From assembly GCF_001194135.2 (NCBI RefSeq), contig NC_068990.1, positions 88,888,211-88,952,210 on the forward strand: 64,000 nt of DNA, given 5' to 3'. The position numbers and the translations under genes were made by a program. Positions within the stretch are counted from its first letter, which is position 1, and every line of letters begins with the position of its first letter. Below are positions 1,895 through 63,944 of the stretch, piece by piece. The notes under the pieces were generated by a model. It was not told where the DNA came from. It ran no database searches and saw nothing but the letters and a program-made list of their open reading frames with translations. This DNA is from Octopus bimaculoides. Taxonomy: Eukaryota.

Positions 1895-2174
1895 TTTTCG
1901 AGCGAGATCGTTGCCAGTGCCCCTGGACTGGCTTGTGCGGGTGGCACATAAAAGACACCATTTCGAGCGTGGCCGTTTTCGTGCGGGTGACACGTAAAAG
2001 CACCCACTACACTCTCTGAGTGGTTGGCGTTAGGAAGGGCATCCAGCTGTAAAAACTCTGCCAAATCAGACTGGAGCCTGGTGTTGCCATCCGGTTTCAC
2101 CAGTCCTCAGTCAAATCGTCCAACCCATGCTAGCATGGAAAGCGGACGTTAAACGATGATGATGATGATGATGA
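1895..2174 (+). mobile_element. 5'-truncated RTE LINE (3' UTR only) with (GAT)n tail
   Basis: Near-identical to the reverse complement of 29535-29820, which is contiguous across a gap with an RTE RT C-terminus. Confidence 0.8.
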
Positions 2175-7635: not shown

Positions 7636-10119
7636 GCGATTCACTTATACCTCGTAATAAATTGAGGTTAAAGTGAAATGTAGTGGACTTGAAGGAATAA
7701 CATAAGTACAGAATTTCAGTGGTACCTATCTACAGCTATGTAGACTGGGCTGTTGAGAGTGTAGTATCTTGGCTACGGATAAAGAATACGGATCACCAGC
7801 TCTTCAACTGTAAGCACTAGCGCTATCAACTATGCTAGACGTACAGCACTTTGCTGCAAGCAATGGGAACGTTGTGCAATTAACGAGTGGTCATAGCTCT
7901 CATTTAGTCAATCTCTTATATTCTCTATCTCTCCTTTTCCAATGTCTCTAATTATTGCAGATCGAGCGACTGCGTAGAGGCTCCCCCATAGTGATAGTCA
8001 GCACCCTATTCAAATATGGGCTTTAAGGGCCATTGTAAATGGAAATATCACTGCCGACCCGACAGTAGTTACATTCCAGAGGCCTACAAAGTCTTATTTT
8101 GGCTCTAGTGATAGTAATGATGGTTCGGTAAGTAATTTTGGAAAAGAAGTCAATGATGTAATTGTCTGCCTTATTATTAGATTGGTTAAGCAAACATGAG
8201 CCAACAAGGGGACCTCAACCTGTTAGAAATAGCAACCAACATTTCCACCAAACCACTCTAAACAGACCTATTGTATAATATATTCCAAATGAAACAATAT
8301 CGGAAAAATAAGTCGAGTGAGTCATGGCTTTAACATCTTTAATCAGGAGTCTATGACTGACCGGGAGCTAAGCAACAACAATAACTTGTCTACGACTCTA
8401 TTATAGGCAAGAATACCGTCTCTTTTGTATTAAGAGCAATGCCACAAATAATAGAGTTCTGATAATATGAAGAGAAAAAGGGGTACCATTGTTAGAGTAT
8501 AAACATGGAAGTAGAACATAATATAGAATCAAACGAAATATTCTCTAGTTACAGTTAATATTTATATAAGTTGACGAAAAGAGAAATTATAATTAGTATC
8601 CAACGTTAATAATAACAGTGGAGGGATTTGTTCTTGACATATTTGCAAACTGTTGCTTTTGAAGGTATGAAAGAATGAATGTAGAGCGGTGGGAATGGGA
8701 TTATAAATAGTTTGCAGGGCGGCTTAACTTTGAGATATGTCAGTAGAGTTCTTATACAACAGGAGGTAATTCAGTTCAGCAGAGATATTTTTTCCTCTTC
8801 TTTTCTTTTTTATGATATTCATTTAATGAATGGCAGGTGTAATATGAATAGGCGGTACATAGAAATATGGGAATATATTTCATTTATTGGAATTTTTATA
8901 TCAAATCATAACATGTGTTCATTTTCTGACTGTAGTAATCACAACAATAACCTTAACAACAATAATTTCTAAAATAAGCATAAGGACAAATTTTATGGGT
9001 GAGGTTAGTTGATTAAATCGACTTCCATTATTTGACTGGAACTTTATTTTCGACTTCGAAAGGATGGAAGGTAAAGCTGACCTCGATGAAAATTTCCCTG
9101 GTTAACGATTGTAATAGTTGTTATTCAGGCACTAAACCAACAATTTTAGGAGGAGGGTGTTAGTCGATACCATCAACCCTAGTTTGCTTAAACATATACA
9201 ACTACACACAATCACATACACACTCGTACAGAATCAGAAGTTTCATTGAAGGAAGTAATGCTTCATTGATTTGTTTTGTTTGTGTAACAAATCATTGTAT
9301 CATGTAAACATGTCTTAGTCGGAAGAGAAAGATGGTGATCAAGAATCTTTTGAGGCTTCTGTGACTGGTTGAAAGAAGGGAGGAAGTTAGTCTCCAATTA
9401 GTGACCTGACCTAAATGCTCCAATGATGACGGACTAAATGTTGGTGGTAGATTGGGTGACGGTTTACGTATACTGGTTTTCTACTACGCAAAATAAATAA
9501 ATAAAAATCTTTCTGCAATGGAGCCCATTAATAAAATTAATATATTCTCAAGTATTACACTCGACCATCCACTCAACTAAATGTATTTATGCTTAAGGAA
9601 GAAATTGTTAATTAAATGGATGAAATTTCAGATGGTCTTAATTAATTCTTGAGAAAATGATTGTTATTTGAATACTGTAAGTAAATGGATATACGTCGGT
9701 TTCGACGATGAATATTCAGTTGCTTGATCAGTTGAAATCTCTTCTCATTTAATTAGTGGATATTCCACAAGGTGTGAGATAAAGTGTATGACAAAGCAGG
9801 ATCTTTGAATAACAGGCTTCCAAATAATTTCCACCTACTCGTACACGTATGTATGTGTGTATCTAGTATGGTACAGAAAAAAAAATACAAATGAGTTCTG
9901 AATATTCGTGTTGGGTAAGAGTAGATATATTTGCTATCAAAAAGCTTGATGGAGAACTCATTTCATTTCAGCGGGTTTACTCGCCTGCGCGCACACACGC
10001 ACACGGTGTGTTCGGGTTGAATTTGACAGTTTGCATAAAAAAGAAAAGAAAACACATCCCATCCAAAAGTAAAAGTATTAAAAAATTAAAATAATATCAA
10101 CTAGATTATGGCTGGGAGA

Positions 10120-10835
10120 TAACAGTTTACTCAAAGTAGCCACCTTCAGATTCCACCACGGTCTCAAGACAGCTCTGGTGCATGCGTTCCTCACTGTGCC
10201 CTTGGGACAATCTTCGAACACGTTGATCTTGGCCACCAGCTTCGCCTTGGTGTTGCAAATAGAGCGGTTGGTGTCTTTCTCAACACATTGTAATCCATAG
10301 GATTACAATCGGGAAAATTAGAATGCCAAACAACCACTGTTGACGCTTACCGGAGGCTTCGCAAGGAGCTGAATTCTGCTGCTACACATTGCCTTCTAGC
10401 ATCAACCTTCATCCATGGTTTGATTATAGACTCCTGTAGCTTCACATAGCGGTCTGAATTGAGCCTAAAGCCCTGTTCAAAGATACGGAGCGGTATGACA
10501 TTACCATTACAAGAGATACATCCAAAGACCATCACAGTTTGGGGGAGCTTGGTTTTCATGATACATGGGACATCACATGGATTGCAGGCAAGCTACCCGT
10601 CGTTCTGAGTGTTGTGCAACTGGCCCTGGCAGAAGTTTTTTTTTTTTTTTTTCATTTTAGAAGAACCAGATATATCCCTGGCTCATCTGGATGCTTTAGA
10701 TTGTTCAGGAGCTTCTTTGTCTTCGTCAACTAGTTCTCCTTGTCCTTGGCTCTCAGATTGTGTCCCTTGTGTTTCTTGTACGAGCGGTAGCGAAGGTTCT
10801 TATTCGGCGTCTGCAGTTCTTTTGTCTCATGAAAA
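10120..10835 (-). mobile_element. Degenerate Tc1/mariner-superfamily transposase, DD37D (maT)-like
   Basis: Minus-strand translation with stops and frameshifts: LRYRSYKKHKG..AKDKEN*LTKTKKLLNNLKHPDEPG..KNFCQGQLHNTQN..MKTKLPQTVMVFGCIS..RLNSDRYVKL..IKPW..DCNPMDYNVLRKTPT. Confidence 0.75.
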
Positions 10836-11528
10836 CTATTTTTTCTTTAATGGAGTGCTAATTCATTATTTTACCTTTATTCGTCTTTGATGTTGAAATA
10901 TATGCCACCGGTCACTGAGTTATTTCCGTTAGCTAATTCTTGTTACACACACACGTGCACGCACGCACGCACGTAAACAGTCATTGCTGTAAACTTGATT
11001 GTTCTCTCATAGGTGCGCGAAGAAAATGATTCTTCGATTACATTAAAACTTTGATCAAAACATTTTCAATATTTGGGCATCGTAGAAACCTCTCGTGTAT
11101 ACATAACTAATCAGTATAAATAAGCCAATAAATAAATATTTATGAAAATAGCCTTTTCTTCTCTTCTATGTGAACAGGGAGGGTCAGTGCGTCAATAATA
11201 TACGCGTTTCCCACGGATAATTGACGATAAAAAACAAAAAAAAAAACAAAACATAACTTTTACTCTACTCTGAGCGGTCCTATTAATGAAGCCGAATGAC
11301 ATTTGACCGATTTTTTAATATTTATATTCTGATGTGTGTTTTTTTTTCTTGCGTTTTACTTTACTTAATTCACTGTTTGATCAATCGGGACGCTATAAAA
11401 TAGACGTGAAGTCTATTTTATAGCGCGCCTTGCCATTAATGTACGTATACGATGGTAATTCAAAAATCAAACGCACTCTTATTTCTGTATTTTAGTAAAA
11501 CAAAAGCAGGGGCATTTTTCGAAACTAA

Positions 11529-19005: not shown

Positions 19006-19140
19006 GATATATGACGGGCTTCTTTCAGTTTCCGTCTACCAAATCCACTCACAAGGTTTTGGTCAGCTCGAGGCTATAGTAGAAGACACTTGCCCAAGGT
19101 GCCACGCTGTGGGACTGAACCGGAACCATGTGGTTGGTAA
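18770..19140 (-). mobile_element. tRNA-derived SINE, family 1
   Basis: Reverse complement of the family seen on + at 33757-34137 (ggttccggttcagtcccacagcgtggcaccttgggcaagtg...ccagcatggcc...gaaacaagtaaaag). Confidence 0.8.
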
Positions 19141-19539
19141 GCGAGGAGAATTGGAAATTCTTTCGTTTTGTGATCACAAAATAAAGTGTTAAAATATCGT
19201 ATGGAAAAAGGATTTTTGAGAATCATAATCTCTGTATTTTAAAATGTGAATTTGAAAGATTATGTGCATATAGTATGCAGATGTTCACTGAAAGTATTAT
19301 TCCTTGGCCATGTTGCTGATACAAAAATAACTGCTGTCAGACCTTTAAAAACAAGAAAACAAAATAAAACTCACATCACCCTCCAAAAATACTGTTCTTA
19401 TCAGGAAAAGCAGAAACAACACAGCTTTCAATTTTTTTTTTTTTTTTTTTTTTTGTAAAAATTCCCATCTCTGTGCTTTTGTAAGAAGATTAAATAAGCT
19501 GTTATTAAAAGATAATTGTTTTCAAACATTTGACTAATT

Positions 19540-23300: not shown

Positions 23301-24880
23301 TTACGTATATGTGAGTACTTTCATATTTCCCATGTATATTTGCTTGCTGTTTGTAAACAATGGCTTCACTAATGGTGTCATTTACTTTTAATCCACTGCA
23401 AAAGCATGTCTGGGTTTCTTGACATTTTGCACAATCTTTGTAAAGAAAAAGACTTGTTCATACAGAGTCAATTATTTTCAGTTCTCCTTGTAAACATGTC
23501 CATGTTTATTGTTTTACAAACTGGATAAATATTACCACACTTGGAAATAAGTTGAGGCTGATGACAGGAAGAGTATTTAACCAGAGACAGTTCTGCCTGA
23601 ACATACTCTTGTCGACCCATGCAAGCATCCTATTAAAACTAAAATGATGATATGTGTGCGTGCATCTTCGCACGTTCACATGCACATTGGGTTAAACATT
23701 CTGAAACACAGTAATCAGAATATTATAGGGTAAACATCAATATTTATGTAATTATACAGGTATAATCGTACAAGATTTTATTCTTTTGGTAAATATTTTG
23801 TACCTCAGTATGGAATAATTTTTTTCCACTTTTTTGTGGGTGCATTCAACATGTCTGACCGCCAAACCCACTGCAAGCCACTTTTTTTTCTGGAAAAGAA
23901 AGCTAGGAGGGGTGGTGGGGACCTTGAAGTTTCCCAAGTAAGTTTTGTTTTGCAGGTCTTTTTTTCTTTTCTAGGTTATTTTGCATGCTTTCAACGAATG
24001 TGATATCAAAATTACGTGTGAATGACTCCTTTTTCTAGAAAAAGAAAGATTTGGCTGCTATTTCTAGAATGCCCTGCTACCATGTAACAGCTATTTGCAT
24101 TCACACTGAAATATTTACCAACTTTTTTCCTTAACTGATACTTTATCAATCCCAGAAACCCAGAATGATGAGTTTTAGATGACCTTATTAGAGTTTGAAC
24201 CCAAAGTGTAAAAGCCAGAAAAATAACACAAAGCATTATGTTTGACACTACAATGTTGCTGCCAATTCAAATAATACTGATTTCCAATATAGGTACAAGA
24301 CCAGAAATTAAGTGGAAGGGAAATGCTTGATTATATTACGCTAGGTACTTTATTTTATTGACCCAGTGAGAATGAAAGCAAAGTTGATGGCAACAAGATT
24401 TGAACTCAAAATTTAATGAGTTGTAACTAAAAATTGCTTTGAATTTTGTATGAGACTTAAAATTCTGTCCATTTGTATAATATGCAATTGTGTATGTAAT
24501 TGTATTTACCAAAAAAAAAAAAAAATTAACCAAACATTTTATGTACATGCATGTAACTTGTGTTTTTTTTTTTTATTTCTTCTAGCTTGAAGATGCCCCC
24601 TTTTCATTGAGGACACAAATTGACATGCAGAATACCATAGCAGAGCATTGTTATAATCAACTTTGGAGATTGCCTTATCTACCAGAACTGGGAACTAAAA
24701 GTTCTTTCCAGAGACGAAAACATTCCTACATAATTCTTTAAACTAACATGACCAGAATGGTTATTATTCTGTTTAAATTATAATTAAACTATTTAAGTTC
24801 TAATTATGACAATGCAAATATTTAAAGAAGCTTAAGCAATTCCTACTACTTTCAAGGGAAAATACTATAAGAGAATAAAA

Positions 24881-26332
24881 ATGGAGAAAAGTGACTTAAA
24901 TGAGAATTTTACATACCAAGATGATATCATTCGTCGCACACGGAAAGCAATCCGTGATTTGCACACACTTCGTAATGAACACCTCAGCATCATCAATAAT
25001 ATCAAAATGAATTTCAAAAGCAATGTAGTTGATACAAATGATATAACAGTAGAAAAACTTGATGTTTTGAAACATTCCCAAGAAGCAATAGACTTGGCTT
25101 TGGAAGAAGCAGAAATAACAATGCTTTTGACAAAACATTTGCAGTATCTAGAAGGAGAGAACTTGAAACTGCGTACTGAGGTGTCACTTCTGAGGAAAGA
25201 GAATGATTGGTTAAGAAGTGAATTGTTAGATGCTCAAACCAAATTGCAAAACTGTCAAGAATCTCTTGTAGTTGCTGAGGAGAAATTAAAGCACTTTGAG
25301 TTCATGAAAGAGTTAAATTATGATGAGAATGAGGAAAAAACTGATAATGGTAGTGAGGGCAAATGCCGCCCTTCATCTTTTGATATGAGTTTCTTGGATG
25401 ACATTATAGAAGACACAGAAAGTCCTGGCTATGAAATTCCTGCTCGATTCCGATCGTTGTATGACTTAATAACACAGTATGTTATGCAAGGTCGACATCA
25501 GGTAGCATTAACTTTATGTAAGCAAACAATACAGAATTTAGAAAAAACTAGTCGGTTTAACCCTGAAGAAGCTATAGTCCTACATATGCAGGCTCGCATC
25601 TATAAAGATATGGGCAACATGCAAGAGGCTGTCAGAGTGTTAAAGGCTGCTCTTTTAATAAGAGAAAACACTTTAGGTCATGAACATCCTAGTGTGGCAG
25701 CAGTTCTAAATAACCTTGCTGTGATGTATGGAAAAAGTGGTAATTTCAAAGATGCTGAAAAAATGTGTAAGAGAGCTCTGGAAATAAAAGAGAAAATCAA
25801 TGGTACTTATCATCCTTCAGTTGCAAAGTTATTCAATAATCTGGCACTTCTCTGTCAAAATCAAAACAAATATGAACAAGCAGAGTACTATTACAATCAG
25901 TCTTTGGAAATATATAAATCTATGTTTGGAAATGATCATATGTCGGTAATGAAAAGTAAAAATAACCATGCTTCTTTATATCTTCGGCAAGGAAAGTATC
26001 GGCAAGCTCAGGATATCTACAGAGAGGTTCTTATACAGTTTTGTGAAAAGAAATACGGTAGCATCGATGATGACAGTGGGCATACTTTAACTCCTCAGGA
26101 ACAAGAAAATGGTGGCTTGTTAATCTATTATATAAAAAAAATATGCGAACGGAGTAAAATGGGTTTGAACGTTTTTAAGAATCCTGCATTAATCACAACT
26201 TTGGTGAACATGGGTATACTTCATAGACTTATTGGTAAAAACAAAGAAGCTTCTCTCTTTGAAGAGAGTGTCTTTAGAATGAAAAAGACTAACAGTCGCT
26301 ATAAATTAGTAACAGTTCCTGAAGAAAATTGA
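24881..26332 (+). CDS. KLC: Kinesin light chain-like protein, intronless diverged paralog (probable retrogene), 483 aa
   Basis: Uninterrupted ORF. Heptad region EKLDVLKHSQEAIDLALEEAE..KLRTEVSLLRKENDWLRSEL..KHFEFM corresponds to KLC KLRAQVRRLCQENxWLRDEL..KHLEFM. GYEIPARFRSLYDL corresponds to GYEIPARLRTLHNL. TPRs HPSVAAVLNNLAVMYGK, CKRALEIKEK, NNLALLCQNQNKY, KSKNNHASLYLRQGKY and TPR6 TTLVNMGILHRLIGK are present. Confidence 0.95.
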   Translation: MEKSDLNENFTYQDDIIRRTRKAIRDLHTLRNEHLSIINNIKMNFKSNVVDTNDITVEKLDVLKHSQEAIDLALEEAEITMLLTKHLQYLEGENLKLRTEVSLLRKENDWLRSELLDAQTKLQNCQESLVVAEEKLKHFEFMKELNYDENEEKTDNGSEGKCRPSSFDMSFLDDIIEDTESPGYEIPARFRSLYDLITQYVMQGRHQVALTLCKQTIQNLEKTSRFNPEEAIVLHMQARIYKDMGNMQEAVRVLKAALLIRENTLGHEHPSVAAVLNNLAVMYGKSGNFKDAEKMCKRALEIKEKINGTYHPSVAKLFNNLALLCQNQNKYEQAEYYYNQSLEIYKSMFGNDHMSVMKSKNNHASLYLRQGKYRQAQDIYREVLIQFCEKKYGSIDDDSGHTLTPQEQENGGLLIYYIKKICERSKMGLNVFKNPALITTLVNMGILHRLIGKNKEASLFEESVFRMKKTNSRYKLVTVPEEN

Positions 26333-26398
26333 TTTACACTGTATACATACATACATGCATACTGTTCTACACTGCTACAACTCAGTTTATCACATCAC

Positions 26399-26404
26399 AA
26401 TAAA
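26399..26404 (+). terminator. Putative polyadenylation signal for the KLC-like gene
   Basis: AATAAA 67 nt after the stop codon. Confidence 0.4.
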
Positions 26405-27240
26405 TTATTGTGCAATTAAGGTGCTGCACTCATAATGAATGCCTATACACACTGTTCAAGTCATACAACATAAATTCTACTGCATCATTTATGGATCACA
26501 TGCACTTTAATCTTTGTACTTCAAACTCAAAAAGAAAGTACAAGACTCTTCATGTTTGATATATAATAGTAGTCAAGCAGGCACGTTACTCTGCACACTC
26601 TACTGGGAATAAATTTCACTTTGCGTGTAAGCTGCATTGATGTTTACTCAGAGTGGAATTAAGGTACTGCTTACATTTTTTTTTTCACCTGACACTCTAC
26701 TTTGCTTGGTGTCTACCACTTCCACTGTTTAAGATAAAGGGCATTGAAATTTAAGACTCCAACTCCACCAATTTATAAACTTCCATACCCGTCCAAACCT
26801 GAAAGTCAAAAATAAAATACAGAACTCGAAAGTAACACTAAAATCTAAAATATCAAACCTGATTTGTTATAAATTATCACAATGGTAAACATAATGAATA
26901 CTTCTGAATGAATTAGGAATTCTAAAATTTTAAAACATTTCCTGTGATCTTTTTACACATTGTTTGTTTACTACTGTTATGATTGCTTTCATGCACTTAA
27001 TTTATTTCAGGCTAACTTCAGAAATATTTAACATTTTCAACTCCATTACTGACAGCAGCTTAATATATATGCATTTTGGTATTTTGGTATACAGACAGGG
27101 GAAAGTGCTCAGAACATGTACACTATTTGTTTGAAACTGGTAATTTAATTCTTGTTTTTGCCAGGTGCAATTCTTCAGTTGACAAAAAGAGGAAACATTG
27201 ACTGTGGCAAGTGATGGAATAAATCATTGGATTTGAAAAA

Positions 27241-27282
<42 letters not shown>

Positions 27283-27554
27283 NNNNNNNNNNNNNNNNNN
27301 NNNNNNNNNNNNNNNNNNNNNNNNNNNNNNNNNNNNNNNNNNNNNNNNNNNNNNNNNNNNNNNNNNNNNNNNNNNNNNNNNNNNNNNNNNNNNNNNNNNN
27401 NNNNNNNNNNNNNNNNNNNNNNNNNNNNNNNNNNNNNNNNNNNNNNNNNNNNNNNNNNNNNNNNNNNNNNNNNNNNNNNNNNNNNNNNNNNNNNNNNNNN
27501 NNNNNNNNNNNNNNNNNNNNNNNNNNNNNNNNNNNNNNTATATATATGTATATA

Positions 27555-27690
27555 TGGTATGAAATTAATGATATATATATATGGTATGAAATTAATGATA
27601 TATATATATGGTATGAAATTAATGATATATATATATGGTATGAAATTAATGATATATATATATGGTATGAAATTAATGTGATATATATAT
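27555..27690. repeat. 27-bp minisatellite, about 5 copies (GGTATGAAATTAATGATATATATATAT)
   Basis: Direct tandem copies visible immediately after the 27283-27538 gap. Confidence 0.9.
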
Positions 27691-29228
27691 ATAAGTAAAG
27701 AATGGCTAAGTTTGCTTCGCAATTATGAGTTTTCGGGTTCAGTTGCATTGTGTGGAATCCTTGGCAAGTGCCTTTACCATAGTCCTGCGTCACCTCAAGT
27801 TTTGTTAGTGAAATTGTGTAGACAGATGAACTGTACCAATAACTTCAAGTGCAACCTTCTCAAACTGTCATGCTGGTAGTACTTCAGAATTATGTTAAAG
27901 ATACAAGTGTTTGTGAAATATTCAACCACTTTGCATGCTAATTCAGTAAGTTGGTTATTGAGTTGATTGAATTGCTGGATGTGCAATCAGTCATAATCAA
28001 TAGGTTAGCTAAATTAGTTAACTATAACCATTGCATCATGTCTTTTTATTGGTAGAATAATGCTTCCAAAACATACCTGTTTCAACTCCAATTTTCACAT
28101 CAAGACTTGTGTGTGTGTGTGTACACACATGCTTGTGTATTTATTGAATTTGTGGCATATTGAAGGTTCCCTCTGCTTGGTTTGGTGATGACCCCTTGTC
28201 TCCTTTTGTTACAACTCTGATATATATGAATAAATGTGTTTATATTATCAAAAGGATAAAACAGCAGGACTTAGAACCAAGAAAGGAAAAGAAAATGAGA
28301 AATGCTGCTTGAATAATGTGTGTAGTAAGAAGAAAAATATTTACAAACACATTTCTTTTATCTTTCATTGCAAATTTCCTATTAAATTCATATTTTATGG
28401 TATGGAGTACCTAGTCAAAACTCCAAAGTAATACCTTAATGAAGAAAAGATGTATGGAAATATATGCTGACTGAATAAAGATCTGATGGAACTAGGTATA
28501 AATAGTGAGGGAATTTTGCATGTCAGACATGAAATTTGAGTAGCTGTTGTGTTTGGACTTGAAAATGTTAACATTGTTATTCATTTTTCTTACTATTAAA
28601 CAACGTTGGTGTAACAAATACAATTTATTTATTGAACAATGCATTGTTGTTATATCATATGAACTGAGGAAGGAAAAAACAAACTAATATGATCAAATAT
28701 AAATCTCAATTATTTTTTACAAATAAAATTGTTGAATTATAGCTTTTATTGTATTAGTTTTTGTTTCTTGTAACATCTGCCAAATAGCAACTATTTACCT
28801 GATTTATATTACACTCTGTTTGTCTTTCTGAATGCCTGTCTTAACTTTTGCTAGTTGTTCACTTTCACTCTTATCAATATTAGTTCTTTTCTTTTGCTAC
28901 TTCCATTCTCTCTCCCTCTGTTTCTTTTCTCTCTATACTGTCACTCTTTATTCCCTTTCTTTTTTCCTATTCTTTCCTTTGTCCCTGTTTAACTCTGTTC
29001 TCCCTCACTTAATCAGTCTTTATACTTTACCTCTTTCCTCTTTCACATTTTCAGCAGCTGCTACCTTCTAGTGTTTTAGACCTACTTGCAAAAATTTACA
29101 AAAACAAGAAATGGCCCTCACATGATTGGTTTTCTAATGAACAACTACAATATTTTGTTAAATCCTAGATGATGATGATGAATGTTGATGATGATTTTTA
29201 AAAGCTTGCCATTATTTTAAATCTCTCT

Positions 29229-29534: not shown

Positions 29535-30486
29535 CATCATCATCATCATCATCATCATCGTTTAACGTCCGCTTTCCATGCTAGCATGGGTTGGACGATT
29601 TGACTGAGGACTGGTGAAACCGGATGGCAACACCAGGCTCCAGTCTGATTTGGCAGAGTTTCTACAGCTGGATGCCCTTCCTAACGCCAACTACTCAGAG
29701 TGTAGTGGGTGCTTTTACGTGTCACCCGCACGAAAACGGCCACGCTCGAAATGGTGTCTTTTATGTGCCACCCGCACAAGCCAGTCCAGGGGCACTGGCA
29801 ACGATCTCGCTCGAAAATCCTACAGGNNNNNNNNNNNNNNNNNNNNNNNNNNNNNNNNNNNNNNNNNNNNNNNNNNNNNNNNNNNNNNNNNNNNNNNNNN
29901 NNNNNNNNNNNNNNNNNNNNNNNNNNNNNNNNNNNNNNNNNNNNNNNNNNNNNNNNNNNNNNNNNNNNNNNNNNNNNNNNNNNNNNNNNNNNNNNNNNNN
30001 NNNNNNNNNNNNNNNNNNNNNNNNNNNNNNNNNNNNNNNNNNNNNNNNNNNNNNNNNNNNNNNNNNNNNNNNNNNNNNNNNNNNNNNNNNNNNNNNNNNN
30101 NNNNNNNNNNNNNNNNNNTCCTGGGCCTACCTCTTCCACGGGTTCCCTCAACTGTTAGGGTGTGGCACTTTTTCACGCAGCTATCCTCCTCCATTCTCAC
30201 CACATGTCCATACCAGCGCAATCGTCTCTCTTGCACGCCACAACTGATGCTTCTAATGTTCAGCTTTTCTCTCAAGATACATACACTCTGACGGGTATTC
30301 ACATTGACATTACACATCCAACGGAGCATACTGGCTTCATTCCTTGCGAGCTTACGTATGTCCTCAGCAGTTACAGCCCATGTTTCACTGCCATGCAGCA
30401 TGGTTGTTCGTACGCATGCGTCATACAGTCTGCCTTTTACTCTGAGTGAGAGTCCCTTTGTCGCCAGCAGGGGTAACATACGTAAG
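29535..30486 (-). mobile_element. 5'-truncated RTE-clade LINE (RT C-terminus, 3' UTR and (GAT)n tail), spans a gap
   Basis: LSLRVKGRLYDACVRTTMLHGSETWA..RNEASMLRWMCNV..LREKLNIRSISCGVQERRLRWYGHVVRM..VEGTRGRGRPR is an open-frame RTE RT C-terminal signature. Confidence 0.9.
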
Positions 30487-30708
30487 AAATAAATATATAT
30501 ACATAGAGCTATATAAAGACTAATGAATATCTTGCTGAATTCTACAAAAGATGTGGAAACTGGGAAAGATACACACACACACGCATTTATATACATGTAT
30601 ATGTGCATGCAGTCACACACTGGTCAGTTTGTTTGAAAAAAAAGATAAGGTAATGATAAATCATGCTAAGCTTGAGACCTTTAGTTTTTGAAATAACATG
30701 TGCGTGTG

Positions 30709-32619: not shown

Positions 32620-32930
32620 ATTCATTATCATCATCATCGTCATTGCAATCACTACAACCAGCTACATCGACATTACTATTCCCATCACTGTCACCACTTC
32701 TAATACCACTGTTAATACTACCATTACTGCCACTAGTACCATTACCATTGGTACCACAGCCATTGCTGTTAAAATTGCCATCACTACTGTCACACTAACA
32801 CCACTGCCAACACTATCACTACAGCCACTAACTTTAACGCTACCTTCATTACTATCACTGCTACCATGGTTACCACTACCACTGACACCACCACCACCAC
32901 CACCATTGCTATCACCACTACCATCATAAT
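32620..32930. repeat. Degenerate (ACC/CAY)n trinucleotide tract
   Basis: Low-complexity sequence that accounts for the Thr-rich and Val-rich pseudo-ORFs. Confidence 0.8.
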
Positions 32931-33756
32931 TATATAACTTCCTCCTAGACTGAAAACAATGATGTTTAAATTTAACATAGTTTCTCATTAGAGGAAAACT
33001 TGTAGTTATTGTTGTAATGCTATGATTCAGTAAGAAATTATGCTGCTGCCAGCTTGTCAAATCAAGTTTTCATATCAGTTCATATCATTAAAATGTGATT
33101 CATTTTGATTAAACATCAGCTGGCCCAGTCAGTTGTCAGTCAAGGTTTGAAGGAAAAACTGGCACACCTCTTTCCTCAATTTCACATGGCTTTGTGTGTG
33201 GGTGGGGCACTGTCCTCTTTCATTCATTAGTCATAATACACACACACATAGTTACATATATCCACATATACATATGATTACATATACCCATACACACACA
33301 TACACACATAAAACCATGCATTCTCTCTCTCTCTCTCTCTCTTTCACACGCACACACTACACTCATGCACAAACAGACACACACCACTCTCTCTGATAAA
33401 TTGTGAACGATTTCATATATCCCTTTTGATATCAACCTGCCTCAAGCTACCCCTGGTTCTTTGATACAGACTTCCTGTAATCTAAAAATTTCCATCAAAA
33501 TTTCATGTTAATTTATGTTCTAAACACCAGCTTGATAATGTGAAGTTACTTATTTTGCTAACTTCTTTATTACTTTCAAAATTAGTTGCAACAGATGTAG
33601 GATATTTCAACAAAAATATAGCACCAGAAAATTTCTTTTGCTAAATTTCTTTTTCTAAAGAACAATATATGTAACTTGATGTCAAACAAATATTGCTAGG
33701 GTTTTCATCTGAAAAGCACCAGTATTTCTGTTTTCTTACTTATATTTATATTCTCA

Positions 33757-34137
33757 GGAGTGACTGTGTGGTAAGTAGTTTGCTTACCAACCATGTGGTT
33801 GCGGGTTCAATCCCACTGTGTGGCACCTTGGGCAAGTCTCTTCTATAGACTCAAGCCAACCAAAGCCTTGTGAGTGTATTTGGTAGATGGAAACTGGAAG
33901 AAGCCCGTCGTATATATATATGTGTGTGTTTGTGTGTCTGTGTTTGTCCCCCCCCCCCAACATCACTTGACATCCAATGCTGGTGTGTTTACGTTTCCAT
34001 AACCTAGCAGTTTGGCAAAAAGAGATCGATAGAATAAGTACTAAGCTTACAAAGAATAAATCCTGGAGTCAATTTACTCAACTAAAAGGTGGTGCTCCAG
34101 CATGGCTGCAGTCAAATGACTGAAACAAATAAAAGAA
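33757..34137 (+). mobile_element. Full-length tRNA-derived SINE, family 1
   Basis: tRNA-like A/B boxes (tgtggtaagtag; gggttcaatccc), gtggcaccttgggcaagt body and ...gaaacaaataaaagaat tail. Confidence 0.85.
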
Positions 34138-40232: not shown

Positions 40233-49437
<9,205 letters not shown>

Positions 49438-56790: not shown

Positions 56791-57148
56791 ACATCTGTTT
56801 CAACACACGATTTCACATAAAAAATCTAGCAAAACAAATATATAATCGGAATATATATANNNNNNNNNNNNNNNNNNNNNNNNNNNNNNNNNNNNNNNNN
56901 NNNNNNNNNNNNNNNNNNNNNNNNNNNNNNNNNNNNNNNNNNNNNNNNNNNNNNNNNNNNNNNNNNNNNNNNNNNNNNNNNNNNNNNNNNNNNNNNNNNN
57001 NNNNNNNNNNNNNNNNNNNNNNNNNNNNNNNNNNNNNNNNNNNNNNNNNNNNNNNNNNNNNNNNNNNNNNNNNNNNNNNNNNNNNNNNNNNNNNNNNNNN
57101 NNNNNNNNNNNNNNNNNNNNNNNNNNNNNNNNATATATATATATATAT

Positions 57149-62093: not shown

Positions 62094-62488
62094 NNNNNNN
62101 NNNNNNNNNNNNNNNNNNNNNNNNNNNNNNNNNNNNNNNNNNNNNNNNNNNNNNNNNNNNNNNNNNNNNNNNNNNNNNNNNNNNNNNNNNNNNNNNNNNN
62201 NNNNNNNNNNNNNNNNNNNNNNNNNNNNNNNNNNNNNNNNNNNNNNNNNNNNNNNNNNNNNNNNNNNNNNNNNNNNNNNNNNNNNNNNNNNNNNNNNNNN
62301 NNNNNNNNNNNNNNNNNNNNNNNNNNNNNNNNNNNNNNNNNNNNNNNNNNNNNNNNNNNNNNNNNNNNNNNNNNNNNNNNNNNNNNNNNNNNNNNNNNNN
62401 NNNNNNNNNNNNNNNNNNNNNNNNNNNNNNNNNNNNNNNNNNNNNNNNNNNNNNNNNNNNNNNNNNNNNNNNNNNNNNNNNNNNNNNN
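62094..62488. other. Assembly gap (others at 27283-27538, 29827-30118, 34174-34231, 39868-39877, 56860-57132, 63297-63779)
   Basis: Runs of N, mostly flanked by TA/CA microsatellites. Confidence 1.
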
Positions 62489-62835: not shown

Positions 62836-63944
62836 CATTCTACACAATTACGGTCGATGCTTTCTATTTTCTTTACTTATAACAGAGGTAGGGAGACGAA
62901 GAAGGGAGATTGAGTTATAGAAAGAGGGAAAATATCTTATGTGTTTAGGATATCATTCTGGGAGTCTTTGAAAGATCTTGTTTTATTTTTCCTATTTATC
63001 ATTATTTTTTGCTCCAGTATTAATTCGCCTTGTTTTATAGTTCTCCACGTAGACTCGTGTCTTGATAAGTGTTTTGAAATAATATAGTCGTTTGATCTCT
63101 TTGTTTTTTGCATGCCTGTTAAAGCCACTCCTTCTAATTTTATCATAATGATAAAAAAAAAAAAGATTATAAGCCCTGAGCGGTTCTCTGTCCTTAAGAA
63201 AAAAATTTCTCTCCCTTCTATTTCTTAGCAAACTCTCTTTCTCTCCGCCTCTTACTCCGAAAAAAACAGCGAATATATATATATATATATATATATNNNN
63301 NNNNNNNNNNNNNNNNNNNNNNNNNNNNNNNNNNNNNNNNNNNNNNNNNNNNNNNNNNNNNNNNNNNNNNNNNNNNNNNNNNNNNNNNNNNNNNNNNNNN
63401 NNNNNNNNNNNNNNNNNNNNNNNNNNNNNNNNNNNNNNNNNNNNNNNNNNNNNNNNNNNNNNNNNNNNNNNNNNNNNNNNNNNNNNNNNNNNNNNNNNNN
63501 NNNNNNNNNNNNNNNNNNNNNNNNNNNNNNNNNNNNNNNNNNNNNNNNNNNNNNNNNNNNNNNNNNNNNNNNNNNNNNNNNNNNNNNNNNNNNNNNNNNN
63601 NNNNNNNNNNNNNNNNNNNNNNNNNNNNNNNNNNNNNNNNNNNNNNNNNNNNNNNNNNNNNNNNNNNNNNNNNNNNNNNNNNNNNNNNNNNNNNNNNNNN
63701 NNNNNNNNNNNNNNNNNNNNNNNNNNNNNNNNNNNNNNNNNNNNNNNNNNNNNNNNNNNNNNNNNNNNNNNNNNNNNNNGCATATGTGGGCACAGGACGT
63801 CACGAAAATATGGAATACGAAATACGAATACATGGAATATGAACTCTTTTACGAACAACGGAGGAAACAAATGGAAAACAAGACACGCAATATAAAGAAT
63901 GACCCTTTATCAGTTATCAGTTGTTTTTCTTGTCCGTATTTCGA

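What the first reader, a model, noticed from the sequence alone, without database searches (positions are those of the whole stretch)
24881..26332. Intact, intronless, highly diverged kinesin light chain paralog (probable functional retrogene)
Seen: a 1452-nt open frame in AT-rich DNA with the complete heptad region and six TPR-like repeats, many substitutions at otherwise near-invariant KLC positions, and no stops or frameshifts. Known: canonical metazoan KLC genes are multi-exon and highly conserved. Inferred: an old retrocopy kept by selection and evolving quickly, potentially a lineage-specific (e.g. testis or neural) kinesin-1 adaptor. This is the strongest candidate for undescribed biology in the window.
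Basis: partly seen in the sequence, partly recalled or inferred. Interest (0 to 1): 0.7.

Follow-up and report, generated by a model that had tools for sequence, protein, structure and literature searches.

The report
Cephalopod kinesin light chain retrogene
This octopus DNA holds a working extra copy of the kinesin light chain gene, made long ago from a spliced mRNA and shared with argonauts and cuttlefish; it changed heavily early on but kept its cargo-binding pocket, so it is a real but unstudied lineage-specific motor-adaptor gene rather than a dead copy.

Summary
Window 24881-26332 (+) is an intact 483-codon ORF for a full-length kinesin light chain (KLC) homolog (heptad coiled coil plus six TPRs), about 45% identical to every canonical bilaterian KLC.

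It is a functional retrogene:
- The CDS is one exon. The canonical O. bimaculoides KLC spans about 119 kb on another chromosome-scale contig, and Lottia KLC has about 12 introns inside the homologous region.
- Orthologs are intact in O. vulgaris, a third Octopus species, Argonauta hians and three Sepia species, so it predates the octopod-cuttlefish split.
- dN/dS is 0.05-0.07 for Octopus vs Argonauta (dS about 1).
- In Sepia esculenta it is a spliced mRNA, with a 6.3-kb GT-AG intron in the 5' UTR, seen in 85 runs including whole hatchlings.

Of 286 positions invariant in canonical KLCs, 118 changed. Yet 12 of 16 cargo-groove residues and 6 of 8 JIP3-site residues are identical. The LFP autoinhibitory motif is altered (SFL) and its linker is about 20 residues shorter.

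Gene models already exist under automatic names; I found no paper describing the gene. KHC binding, cargo and octopus tissue expression are untested. Moderate interest; a new member of a known kind.

The parts
24881..26332 (+). Complete single-exon CDS (483 codons plus stop) of the KLC paralog
   Evidence: ORF listing; full-length match to human KLC1, E = 2.9e-106; orthologs 96-98% (Octopus spp.), 89-90% (Argonauta), 71-72% (Sepia)
24917..25315 (+). Heptad-repeat / coiled-coil region (aa 13-145), homologous to the KHC-binding region of KLC
   Evidence: Aligned to KLC1 heptad region; 42% identical to canonical octopus KLC and 68% Octopus vs Sepia; AF2 helical hairpin 12-47 / 55-144 with pLDDT about 90
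25379..25402 (+). Altered LFP-acidic-like motif FDMSFLDD (aa 167-174), followed by a linker to TPR1 about 20 residues shorter than in canonical KLC
   Evidence: Canonical LDLGFPDDDDD aligns with FDMSFLDD; identical in all seven paralogs; F171 and D174 invariant across all 36 KLCs
25424..26284 (+). TPR domain (aa 182-468), six TPRs, with conserved cargo-peptide groove (aa 235, 242, 277, 278, 281, 285, 289, 303, 316, 319, 320, 323, 324, 327, 362, 443) and TPR1 JIP3-type site (aa 192, 193, 196, 200, 208, 212, 215, 219)
   Evidence: Pfam TPR_12 E = 1.2e-57; Foldseek best matches KLC1/2 TPR, TM up to 0.86-0.93; residue maps against PMC6214655 and PMC6224480
26054..26176 (+). Paralog-specific segment between TPR5 and TPR6 (aa 392-432), hydrophobic core GGLLIYYIKKICERSKMGLNVF
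   Evidence: Only 22% identical to the canonical loop but 56% (Sepia) to 90% (Argonauta) among paralogs; AF2 predicts a helix at 412-425 at low confidence, pLDDT about 50-63
24563..24586 (+). Polypyrimidine tract plus TTCTAG: probable 3' splice acceptor of a 5'-UTR intron
   Evidence: Sequence; acceptor conserved in three Octopus species, and conservation steps up just downstream of it; the Sepia ortholog has a proven GT-AG 5'-UTR intron in the same relative position. Inferred for octopus, not shown
24587..24880 (+). Probable 5' UTR portion of the coding exon
   Evidence: 95-97% identical to O. sinensis and 88-92% to a third Octopus species, versus 71-87% / 77-81% just upstream
26333..27200 (+). 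Probable 3' UTR (conserved among Octopus species; AATAAA at 26399, 26608, 26811)
   Evidence: 92-99% identical to O. sinensis through about 27200; AATAAA hexamers listed. The true poly-A site is unknown; a (TA)n repeat and an assembly gap start at 27244/27283

Best explanation
Shown: this is a functional gene that arose when a spliced mRNA of the multi-exon kinesin light chain gene was reverse-transcribed and inserted at an unlinked site. That happened before the octopod-cuttlefish split. The copy then went through a burst of amino-acid change and has been held under strong purifying selection since. In cuttlefish it is transcribed from a recruited upstream non-coding exon and spliced across a 6.3-kb 5'-UTR intron. 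The octopus locus in this window has the matching conserved acceptor at 24586/24587. Inferred: the protein still works as a kinesin-1 light chain. Its heptad coiled coil would pair with kinesin heavy chain. Its TPR groove would bind short acidic (W-acidic / Y-acidic type) motifs of cargo adaptors, and its TPR1 face would still take JIP3/4-type zippers or mediate TPR dimerisation. What changed are the regulatory and peripheral parts: the LFP autoinhibitory motif is now SFL on a linker about 20 residues shorter, the TPR5-6 loop is replaced by a conserved hydrophobic segment, the outer faces of TPR1, TPR2 and TPR6 are remodelled, and the long alternatively spliced C-terminal domain is absent. The likely result is a fixed, single-isoform light chain with a different autoinhibition set-point and/or different partner preference from the canonical, heavily spliced KLC.
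For: Retroposition:
- The CDS is one exon in Octopus, Argonauta and Sepia genomes.
- The canonical O. bimaculoides KLC spans 118,684 bp on a 57.5-Mb contig, while the paralog lies on a 94.6-Mb contig.
- Lottia canonical KLC has about 14 coding blocks, with about 12 introns inside the region homologous to paralog aa 79-470.

Age:
- The paralog clade has 100% bootstrap support and its internal topology matches the species tree ((Octopus, Argonauta), Sepia).
- Octopus species are syntenic at this locus.

Selection:
- dN/dS is 0.052-0.066 for Octopus vs Argonauta at dS about 1, and 0.13-0.21 within Octopus; Fisher p ranges from 3.5e-84 to 3e-5.
- Nucleotide similarity to Argonauta stops at the ORF edges.

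Burst then freeze:
- The stem branch is 0.62 substitutions per site, versus 0.15-0.22 since the split.
- 64 of the 118 changed invariant positions are identical in all seven paralogs.

Expression:
- The Sepia esculenta protein is found in 85 run assemblies, all on 2-5 kb contigs.
- Those contigs skip 6.27 kb of the S. pharaonis genome between a GTAACT donor and a Y-tract-TAG acceptor.
- One run is whole-hatchling RNA-seq.

Retained function surfaces:
- 12 of 16 KLC1 groove residues are identical, plus R266K and R327K, and the KLC1-type N343 and N469 are present.
- 6 of 8 JIP3-site residues are identical, plus T-to-S and D-to-N.
- TPR3 is the least-changed domain (69% identical to the parent).
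- The KLC TPR fold is confirmed.
Against: - No direct evidence of transcription in Octopus. The only Octopus run-assembly contigs (L003/L004) are collinear with the genome and look genomic, and no full-length transcript contig carries the O. bimaculoides or O. vulgaris protein.
- Binding to kinesin heavy chain and to acidic motifs is inferred from conservation only. The heptad region is only 42% identical to the parent.
- N259H is fixed in all paralogs and Y313F in octopods. R266 and R327, although charge-conserved, are Lys, which could change motif preference.
- Classical retrocopy marks (poly-A remnant, target-site duplications) were not found, as expected at this age.
- The NJ tree attaches the paralog stem to vertebrates (86% bootstrap), a long-branch artefact, so the donor lineage and date of the retroposition are not resolved.
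- No ortholog was found in squids or Nautilus, so 'coleoid-wide' is not shown.
Confidence: 0.75

Rival explanations
1. The protein has left kinesin-1. It is a neofunctionalised TPR scaffold that uses the old coiled coil for self-association or for a new partner, and binds new ligands rather than classical kinesin-1 cargo adaptors.
For: 41% of positions invariant in all canonical KLCs are changed, with fixed changes concentrated in the heptad region (14), TPR1 (12), TPR2 (12) and TPR6 (9). The LFP motif is altered and the linker shortened. There is a new conserved hydrophobic segment between TPR5 and TPR6. The C-terminal domain is absent.
Against: The surfaces known to matter for kinesin-1 cargo recognition are the ones spared: 12 of 16 groove residues and 6 of 8 TPR1-site residues are identical. 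The heptad region is still conserved among paralogs (68% Octopus vs Sepia, 91% vs Argonauta) and aligns end to end with the KLC1 KHC-binding region.
Confidence: 0.18
2. The paralog is much older than cephalopods: an ancient molluscan or bilaterian KLC duplicate or retrogene that survives only in coleoids. In that case the long stem reflects time rather than a burst.
For: At the post-split rate (0.15-0.22 substitutions per site), a stem of 0.62 would need several times the crown age. The paralog is about equally distant (43-48%) from cephalopod, other molluscan and vertebrate KLCs, and the NJ tree does not place it with cephalopod KLC.
Against: No ortholog appears outside octopods and Sepia in three searches of 5.8 billion proteins, nor in a profile search of 1.84 billion cluster representatives; scores fall straight from the paralog cluster to canonical KLCs. 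This would need many independent losses. Accelerated change just after retroposition is common (general knowledge).
Confidence: 0.1
3. It is a DNA-level (segmental) duplicate that later lost every coding intron.
For: No poly-A remnant or target-site duplications are visible. The gene has an intron, though in the 5' UTR.
Against: About 12 ancestral introns would all need to be removed precisely. The parent spans 119 kb while the paralog locus is about 3 kb of conserved sequence. The UTR intron lies outside parent-derived sequence, as expected for a recruited exon.
Confidence: 0.03
4. It is a dead processed pseudogene whose open frame survives by chance.
For: The O. sinensis assembly has a 1-bp deletion at CDS nt 1146, giving a 402-aa annotation.
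Against: The chance of an open frame this long is about 1e-16. The ORF is intact in at least seven species, dN/dS is 0.05-0.07, and Sepia makes a spliced mRNA. The O. sinensis sequence downstream of the deletion is identical in the shifted frame to the intact O. vulgaris protein and ends at the same stop, which fits an assembly indel or a very recent event.
Confidence: 0.01

Closest known systems
Canonical bilaterian kinesin light chain (octopus KLC isoforms X1-X17; human KLC1/KLC2)
   Same: Same domain order: heptad coiled coil, acidic linker, six TPRs. Same TPR fold. 12 of 16 cargo-groove residues and 6 of 8 TPR1 JIP3-site residues are identical, and the KLC1-type N343/N469 are present.
   Different: Only 43-48% identical, whereas canonical KLCs are 77-91% identical across bilaterians. 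The CDS is a single exon rather than a ~119-kb multi-exon gene. There is no alternatively spliced C-terminal domain. LFP has become SFL on a linker about 20 residues shorter. The TPR5-6 loop is replaced. R266K, R327K and N259H are fixed.
Vertebrate lineage-specific KLC paralogs (KLC3, KLC4); named from my own knowledge, not examined here
   Same: Extra light-chain genes alongside a conserved 'housekeeping' KLC, with diverged sequence and presumed specialised roles.
   Different: Vertebrate paralogs are multi-exon genes from gene or genome duplication. This one is retroposition-derived, restricted to cephalopods, and more diverged from its parent.
Functional retrogenes that recruited an upstream exon or promoter (general class; compare the amphioxus SYCP1 retrogene paper listed, PMC5803294)
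   Same: Single-exon CDS derived from a multi-exon parent at an unlinked site, long-term purifying selection, and a non-coding 5' exon spliced onto the retrocopy.
   Different: The parent is retained and remains highly conserved, so this is addition rather than replacement. The copy diverged far more than most retained retrogenes.

Membership tests
Kinesin light chain family | N-terminal heptad-repeat coiled coil homologous to the heavy-chain-binding region | tested here: met
   Residues 13-145 align with the KLC1 heptad region in 9pmb_C. 38 of 61 positions invariant in canonical KLCs are kept there. AF2 gives a helical hairpin with pLDDT about 90.
Kinesin light chain family | Six-TPR domain with the KLC-type fold | tested here: met
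   Pfam TPR_12 E = 1.2e-57. PDB KLC1/KLC2 TPR E = 1e-64 to 3e-82. Foldseek best matches are KLC TPR structures, TM up to 0.86-0.93.
Kinesin light chain family | Cargo-peptide groove residues (asparagine pairs, R266, K340, R327 and the Tyr/Trp cavity; list from PMC6214655) | tested here: met
   12 of 16 are identical in all paralogs. R266K and R327K conserve charge. N259H is fixed. Y313F occurs in octopods only.
Kinesin light chain family | TPR1 JIP3-binding / dimerisation surface (list from PMC6224480) | tested here: met
   6 of 8 identical; T-to-S and D-to-N in all paralogs.
Kinesin light chain family | Leu-Phe-Pro (LFP)-acidic autoinhibitory motif in the linker | tested here: not met
   The motif reads S-F-L (FDMSFLDD). 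Phe and the following Asp-Asp are kept, while Leu and Pro are replaced in all seven paralogs, and the linker to TPR1 is about 20 residues shorter.
Kinesin light chain family | Physical association with kinesin-1 heavy chain | not testable with these tools
   Needs co-purification, or at least a complex prediction with cephalopod KHC; no multimer tool was available.
Functional retrogene | CDS lacks the introns present in the parent gene | tested here: met
   Single ORF in Octopus, Argonauta and Sepia genomes. Parent gene is 118.7 kb for 698 aa. Lottia KLC has about 12 introns in the homologous region.
Functional retrogene | Parent gene retained at an unlinked locus | tested here: met
   Canonical KLC lies on a 57.5-Mb contig and the paralog on a 94.6-Mb contig. 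That the two contigs belong to the same O. bimaculoides assembly is inferred.
Functional retrogene | Poly-A tail remnant and target-site duplications | tested here: not met
   No A-tract at a plausible 3' end and no flanking direct repeats noticed. Erosion is expected after more than about 250 Myr; that date is from literature knowledge, not tested here.
Functional retrogene | Purifying selection on the ORF | tested here: met
   NG86 dN/dS 0.052-0.066 (Octopus vs Argonauta) and 0.13-0.21 within Octopus. Fisher p = 3.5e-84 to 3e-5.
Functional retrogene | Transcription | tested here: met
   Met for the Sepia esculenta ortholog: spliced contigs in 85 runs, one traced to hatchling RNA-seq. Not tested for the octopus copy in this window.
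Processed pseudogene | Disabling mutations and neutral evolution | tested here: not met
   No stops or frameshifts in 7 of 8 sequences. The single 1-bp deletion in the O. sinensis assembly leaves the downstream frame intact. dN/dS is far below 1.

The most novel reading that the evidence does not exclude
Octopods and cuttlefish carry a second, dedicated kinesin-1 light chain born by retroposition. Its cargo groove is intact but its autoinhibitory latch is rewired (SFL instead of LFP on a shortened linker, plus a new helix between TPR5 and TPR6). This would give these animals a constitutively differently regulated kinesin-1 population for a lineage-specific transport task. It may have been lost in squids, the classical kinesin model.
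Probability: 0.3. Interest if true: 0.55.

Novelty: new member of a known kind. Interest (0 to 1): 0.4.

Why it matters
Kinesin-1 was discovered in cephalopod axoplasm, and KLC is one of the most conserved adaptor proteins in animals (77-91% identity across bilaterians). Here is a natural variant that has been under selection since before the octopod-cuttlefish split. It changed 41% of the otherwise invariant positions but spared the two mapped cargo surfaces. That makes it a ready-made evolutionary mutagenesis experiment: it shows which KLC residues are dispensable for some retained function, and it singles out the LFP latch, the linker length and the TPR5-6 loop as the parts evolution rewired. 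It is also a clean, datable example of a retrogene that recruited an upstream non-coding exon. It does not reveal a new kind of system, and automatic gene models already exist, so the value lies in a specific, testable lead for motor-protein and cephalopod biologists.

Tried and rejected
1. C-terminal tail idea. I thought the tail (…KKTNSRYKLVTVPEEN) came from the short canonical splice isoform (…KKSYEKSKLLVSTPHKQ), which would identify the retrocopied mRNA. A shuffle test gave p = 0.28-0.9, so I dropped it.
2. Dating the origin by phylogeny. Neighbour-joining with 300 bootstraps attaches the long paralog stem to vertebrates (86%), a long-branch artefact, so the tree does not date or place the origin.
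3. Retrocopy marks. I found no convincing poly-A remnant or target-site duplications.
4. Transcript evidence in Octopus. Contigs L003/L004 are collinear with the genome, have identical ends in several runs and stop near a microsatellite, so they are probably genomic reads. No full-length transcript contig carries the O. bimaculoides or O. vulgaris protein.
5. Cuttlefish exon 1 and UTRs have no detectable counterpart in the octopus window.
6. Flank synteny beyond Octopus. The ±10 kb around the Sepia and Argonauta genes share only dispersed repeats with the window.
7. Fetching the canonical octopus KLC DNA to map its introns failed: isoforms were not on record or the gene range was too long. I used Lottia instead.
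8. Looking for squid, Nautilus or more distant members. Nothing was found in two further protein searches and a profile search of cluster representatives. This is absence of evidence, not proof of loss.
9. The reverse-transcriptase-like ORF at 29820-30620 gave no Pfam hit.
10. Literature searches for a described cephalopod KLC retrogene or for tissue data found nothing relevant.
Full report
OBSERVATION. It is the only ORF longer than 300 aa in the 64-kb window. The window is AT-rich (GC about 0.33). With p(stop codon) = 0.071 from the base composition, a 498-codon open frame has a chance of about 1e-16 per start position. Pfam sees strong TPR_12/TPR_10 repeats. Against solved structures the best hit is human KLC1 (9pmb_C, E = 2.9e-106), aligned over query residues 13-470, so it covers the heptad region, the linker and the full TPR domain. 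An AlphaFold2 model built on a 36-sequence alignment (mean pLDDT 75.6) shows a long helical hairpin (12-47, 55-144), a disordered linker (146-185) and twelve TPR helices. Foldseek's best PDB matches are KLC1/KLC2 TPR crystal structures, with TM-scores up to 0.86-0.93.

WHAT SPECIES, AND IS IT KNOWN. The exact protein is already in NCBI/UniRef/EukProt, on a 94.6-Mb contig. The canonical 'kinesin light chain isoform X1...X17 [Octopus bimaculoides]' lies on a 57.5-Mb contig of GCA_001194135.2. The window is therefore most likely O. bimaculoides; this is an inference. Orthologs carry automatic names: 'kinesin light chain [Octopus vulgaris]', 'kinesin light chain [Octopus sinensis]', 'kinesin light chain-like [Argonauta hians]' and 'KLC [Acanthosepion (Sepia) pharaonis]'. 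Full-text searches found no paper that describes a cephalopod KLC retrogene or paralog.

RETROGENE ORIGIN. The coding sequence is one uninterrupted exon in the window, in the Argonauta genome (L001) and in the Sepia pharaonis genome (L014). The canonical O. bimaculoides gene spans 118,684 bp for a 698-aa product and has many splice isoforms. Its DNA could not be fetched, so I mapped the canonical KLC of Lottia gigantea onto its own locus. That coding sequence falls into about 14 blocks over 9.8 kb, and about 12 of the introns lie at positions homologous to paralog residues 79-470. None of them is present in the paralog. Precise loss of all of them from a DNA-level duplicate is very unlikely, so retroposition of a spliced mRNA is the parsimonious origin. 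Poly-A or target-site-duplication remnants were not found, which is expected for an insertion this old.

AGE AND DISTRIBUTION. Close relatives are:
- O. vulgaris, 98% identical, intact 483 aa;
- a third Octopus species from read assemblies, 96%;
- O. sinensis, 96%;
- Argonauta hians, 89-90%;
- a cluster at 71-72% containing S. pharaonis, S. esculenta and at least one more Sepia variant, all about 484 aa.

The paralog clade has 100% bootstrap support and its internal branching follows the species tree. The gene therefore predates the split between octopods and cuttlefish. From literature knowledge that split is on the order of 250-300 million years old; I did not test the date. The window is collinear with the O. 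sinensis locus over more than 10 kb. No ortholog from squids, Nautilus or any non-cephalopod appeared in three searches of 5.8 billion proteins, or in a profile search of 1.84 billion cluster representatives. In those searches the score falls from the single paralog cluster (1069 bits) straight to canonical KLCs (about 394 bits for full-length single-stretch hits). This is absence of evidence, not proof of loss.

SELECTION. Nei-Gojobori estimates give dN/dS = 0.052-0.066 between Octopus and Argonauta at dS about 1.0, and 0.13-0.21 among Octopus species. dN is significantly below dS in every pair tested (Fisher p = 3.5e-84 for window vs Argonauta, 1.3e-13 and 3.3e-5 within Octopus). Octopus vs Sepia is saturated at synonymous sites, and GC3 also differs (0.30 vs 0.60). 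Nucleotide similarity to Argonauta begins 19 nt before the ATG and ends 12 nt after the stop, which independently points to constraint on the protein.

The only blemish is in the O. sinensis assembly. A 1-bp deletion (AGAGAGG to AGAGA-G) at CDS nt 1146 yields the 402-aa annotation. Downstream, the shifted frame is identical to the intact protein of its close relative O. vulgaris and ends at the same stop. That fits an assembly indel or a very recent event, not an old pseudogene.

TEMPO OF DIVERGENCE. The paralog is 43-48% identical to every canonical KLC, cephalopod or vertebrate, while canonical KLCs are 77-91% identical to each other. Since the octopod-cuttlefish split the paralog has changed about 3.5-5 times faster than the canonical gene (71% vs 91% identity). 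The stem leading to the paralog clade is much longer (0.62 substitutions per site, against 0.15-0.22 afterwards). Of 286 columns invariant in 15 canonical KLCs, the window protein differs at 118. At 64 of these, all seven paralogs share the same replacement. So most of the divergence happened before the split and was then frozen: a burst followed by strong constraint. 'Evolving quickly' is therefore true historically and relative to the parent, but not as a description of present-day evolution. Neighbour-joining attaches the long stem to vertebrates (86% bootstrap), a long-branch artefact, so the tree cannot say which lineage donated the mRNA or when.

EXPRESSION AND GENE STRUCTURE. The S. esculenta-type protein (P0122) occurs in 85 independent run assemblies, always on 2-5 kb contigs with variable ends. 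Eight such contigs were fetched (L006-L013). The five I aligned to the S. pharaonis genome each match in two pieces: contig 1-850 to genome 2063-2892, and contig 845-end to genome 9163-12367. The skipped 6.27 kb is bounded by ...CCAG|GTAACT and a polypyrimidine tract ending TTCTAG|G. These contigs are therefore spliced mRNAs of a two-exon gene: a non-coding exon 1 and a second exon holding the whole CDS. One of the runs (SRR31864759) belongs to an RNA-seq study of whole S. esculenta hatchlings, so expression is not confined to adult testis.

In the octopus window a T-rich tract plus TTCTAG ends at 24586, 294 nt before the ATG. It is conserved in three Octopus species. Identity to the third species rises from 77-81% upstream of it to 88-92% downstream. 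This suggests the same architecture, but I have no octopus transcript to prove it. Contigs L003/L004 are collinear with the genome and look genomic.

WHAT WAS KEPT AND WHAT WAS CHANGED. I mapped the KLC1 groove residues listed in the Y-acidic/W-acidic structural paper (PMC6214655). Of the sixteen, twelve are identical in all paralogs: N301, N302, V305, K340, N343, N344, L347, L348, N351, N386 and N469, plus K309, which is K or R. R266 and R327 are Lys. N259 is His. Y313 is Phe in octopods and Tyr in Sepia. The KLC1-type N343 and N469, which that paper shows are responsible for Y-acidic specificity, are present. The eight TPR1 residues that bind the JIP3 leucine zipper, and that also form the TPR1 dimer interface (PMC6224480), are six identical plus T-to-S and D-to-N. 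By domain, TPR3 is the best preserved against the parent (69%), and the fixed replacements concentrate in TPR1, TPR2, TPR6 and the heptad region.

Four things are clearly different:
- The Leu-Phe-Pro autoinhibitory motif reads FDMSFLDD. Phe and Asp-Asp are kept, Leu and Pro are replaced, and this is identical in all paralogs.
- The linker from that motif to TPR1 is about 20 residues shorter.
- The TPR5-TPR6 loop is replaced by a conserved hydrophobic segment (GGLLIYYIKKICERSKMGLNVF), predicted at low confidence to form a helix at 412-425.
- The protein ends 15 residues after TPR6 and so lacks the long, alternatively spliced C-terminal domain of canonical KLC.

MECHANISM. The following steps are shown: the retroposed origin, retention under purifying selection, transcription and splicing in cuttlefish, and preservation of the mapped cargo-binding residues. 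The following is inferred: the protein still pairs with kinesin heavy chain through its heptad region and recruits adaptors carrying acidic short linear motifs, but with a rewired autoinhibitory latch and changed peripheral surfaces. On this reading it is a single-isoform light chain with a different activation threshold or partner set. The main rival is that it has left kinesin-1 and acts as a free TPR scaffold (about 0.18). The sparing of precisely the kinesin-1 cargo surfaces argues against that, but only binding experiments can decide. An origin older than cephalopods (about 0.1), a DNA-level duplicate that lost all its introns (about 0.03) and a dead pseudogene (about 0.01) are less likely, for the reasons given under each rival.

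COMPARISON AND NOVELTY. It passes the structural membership tests for the KLC family, except for the strict LFP motif. It passes the tests for a functional retrogene, except for the eroded insertion marks. It resembles the situation in vertebrates, where extra KLC paralogs exist beside KLC1/2 (my knowledge, not tested here), but it arose by a different route and in a different lineage. I rate it a new member of a known kind. The gene models exist but the gene appears to be undescribed, and its pattern of conservation offers concrete, testable hypotheses about KLC regulation. Interest is moderate (0.4).

LIMITS. There are no octopus expression data, no heavy-chain binding test and no maximum-likelihood phylogeny or codon-model analysis. 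Absence from squids and Nautilus rests on protein databases rather than genome searches.

Noticed in passing
L002 (O. sinensis) 10001-11209; equivalent to window about 26026: The O. sinensis reference assembly has a 1-bp deletion (GG to G) at CDS nt 1146 of this gene. This truncates the public annotation to 402 aa. The downstream frame is otherwise identical to O. vulgaris, so it is probably an assembly or polishing error that propagated into NCBI/UniProt.
   Followed up: partly
L014 (S. pharaonis) 9761-11215: The public S. pharaonis model (404 aa, 'KLC') starts at an internal Met. The open frame and the transcripts support a start 240 nt upstream, giving a 484-aa protein. Another Sepia model (P0130, 503 aa) has an extended C-terminus that looks like a mis-called 3' end.
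   Followed up: partly
window 29820-30620 (-): An ORF interrupted by an assembly gap encodes ...RLRWYGHVVRMEEDS..., which from memory resembles the C-terminal region of non-LTR (RTE/CR1-like) retrotransposon ORF2 proteins. It had no Pfam hit. It would be a relic of the kind of element that supplies reverse transcriptase for retroposition.
   Followed up: partly
window 2014-2174 and 29535-29693; also 19013-19168, 33802-33942, 47485-47614: Short dispersed repeats (about 150 bp) are present in several copies in the window, and also in the Argonauta and O. sinensis loci at 73-84% identity. They are probably SINE-like elements shared across octopods.
   Followed up: no
window 27244-27282, 27283-27538, 27544-27692: A (TA)n microsatellite, then an assembly gap (run of N), then a 27-bp tandem repeat (5.4 copies, 97% matches) lie about 0.9-1.3 kb downstream of the stop codon. 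The Sepia transcript contigs also end at a (TA)n run, so the true 3' ends are not defined by these assemblies.
   Followed up: no
window 29830-30130, 56860-57130, 62150-62480, 63080-63780 (approximate): Several further runs of N (assembly gaps) flanked by TA or CA microsatellites. The very low GC in the last 2 kb of the composition profile is an artefact of these Ns.
   Followed up: no
window 32662-33060 (-); L002 19844-20997 (-): A low-complexity Gly/Ser/Val-rich ORF of 132 aa lies in the window region that aligns to L002 18780-20842, where O. sinensis carries a called 118-aa gene with no Pfam domain. This is likely a spurious or repeat-derived gene call.
   Followed up: no
Sepia vs octopod orthologs (L005, L014 vs window): Codon composition of the same gene differs sharply between lineages: GC3 is 0.60 in Sepia and about 0.30 in octopods. 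This saturates and biases synonymous distances between the two groups.
   Followed up: no
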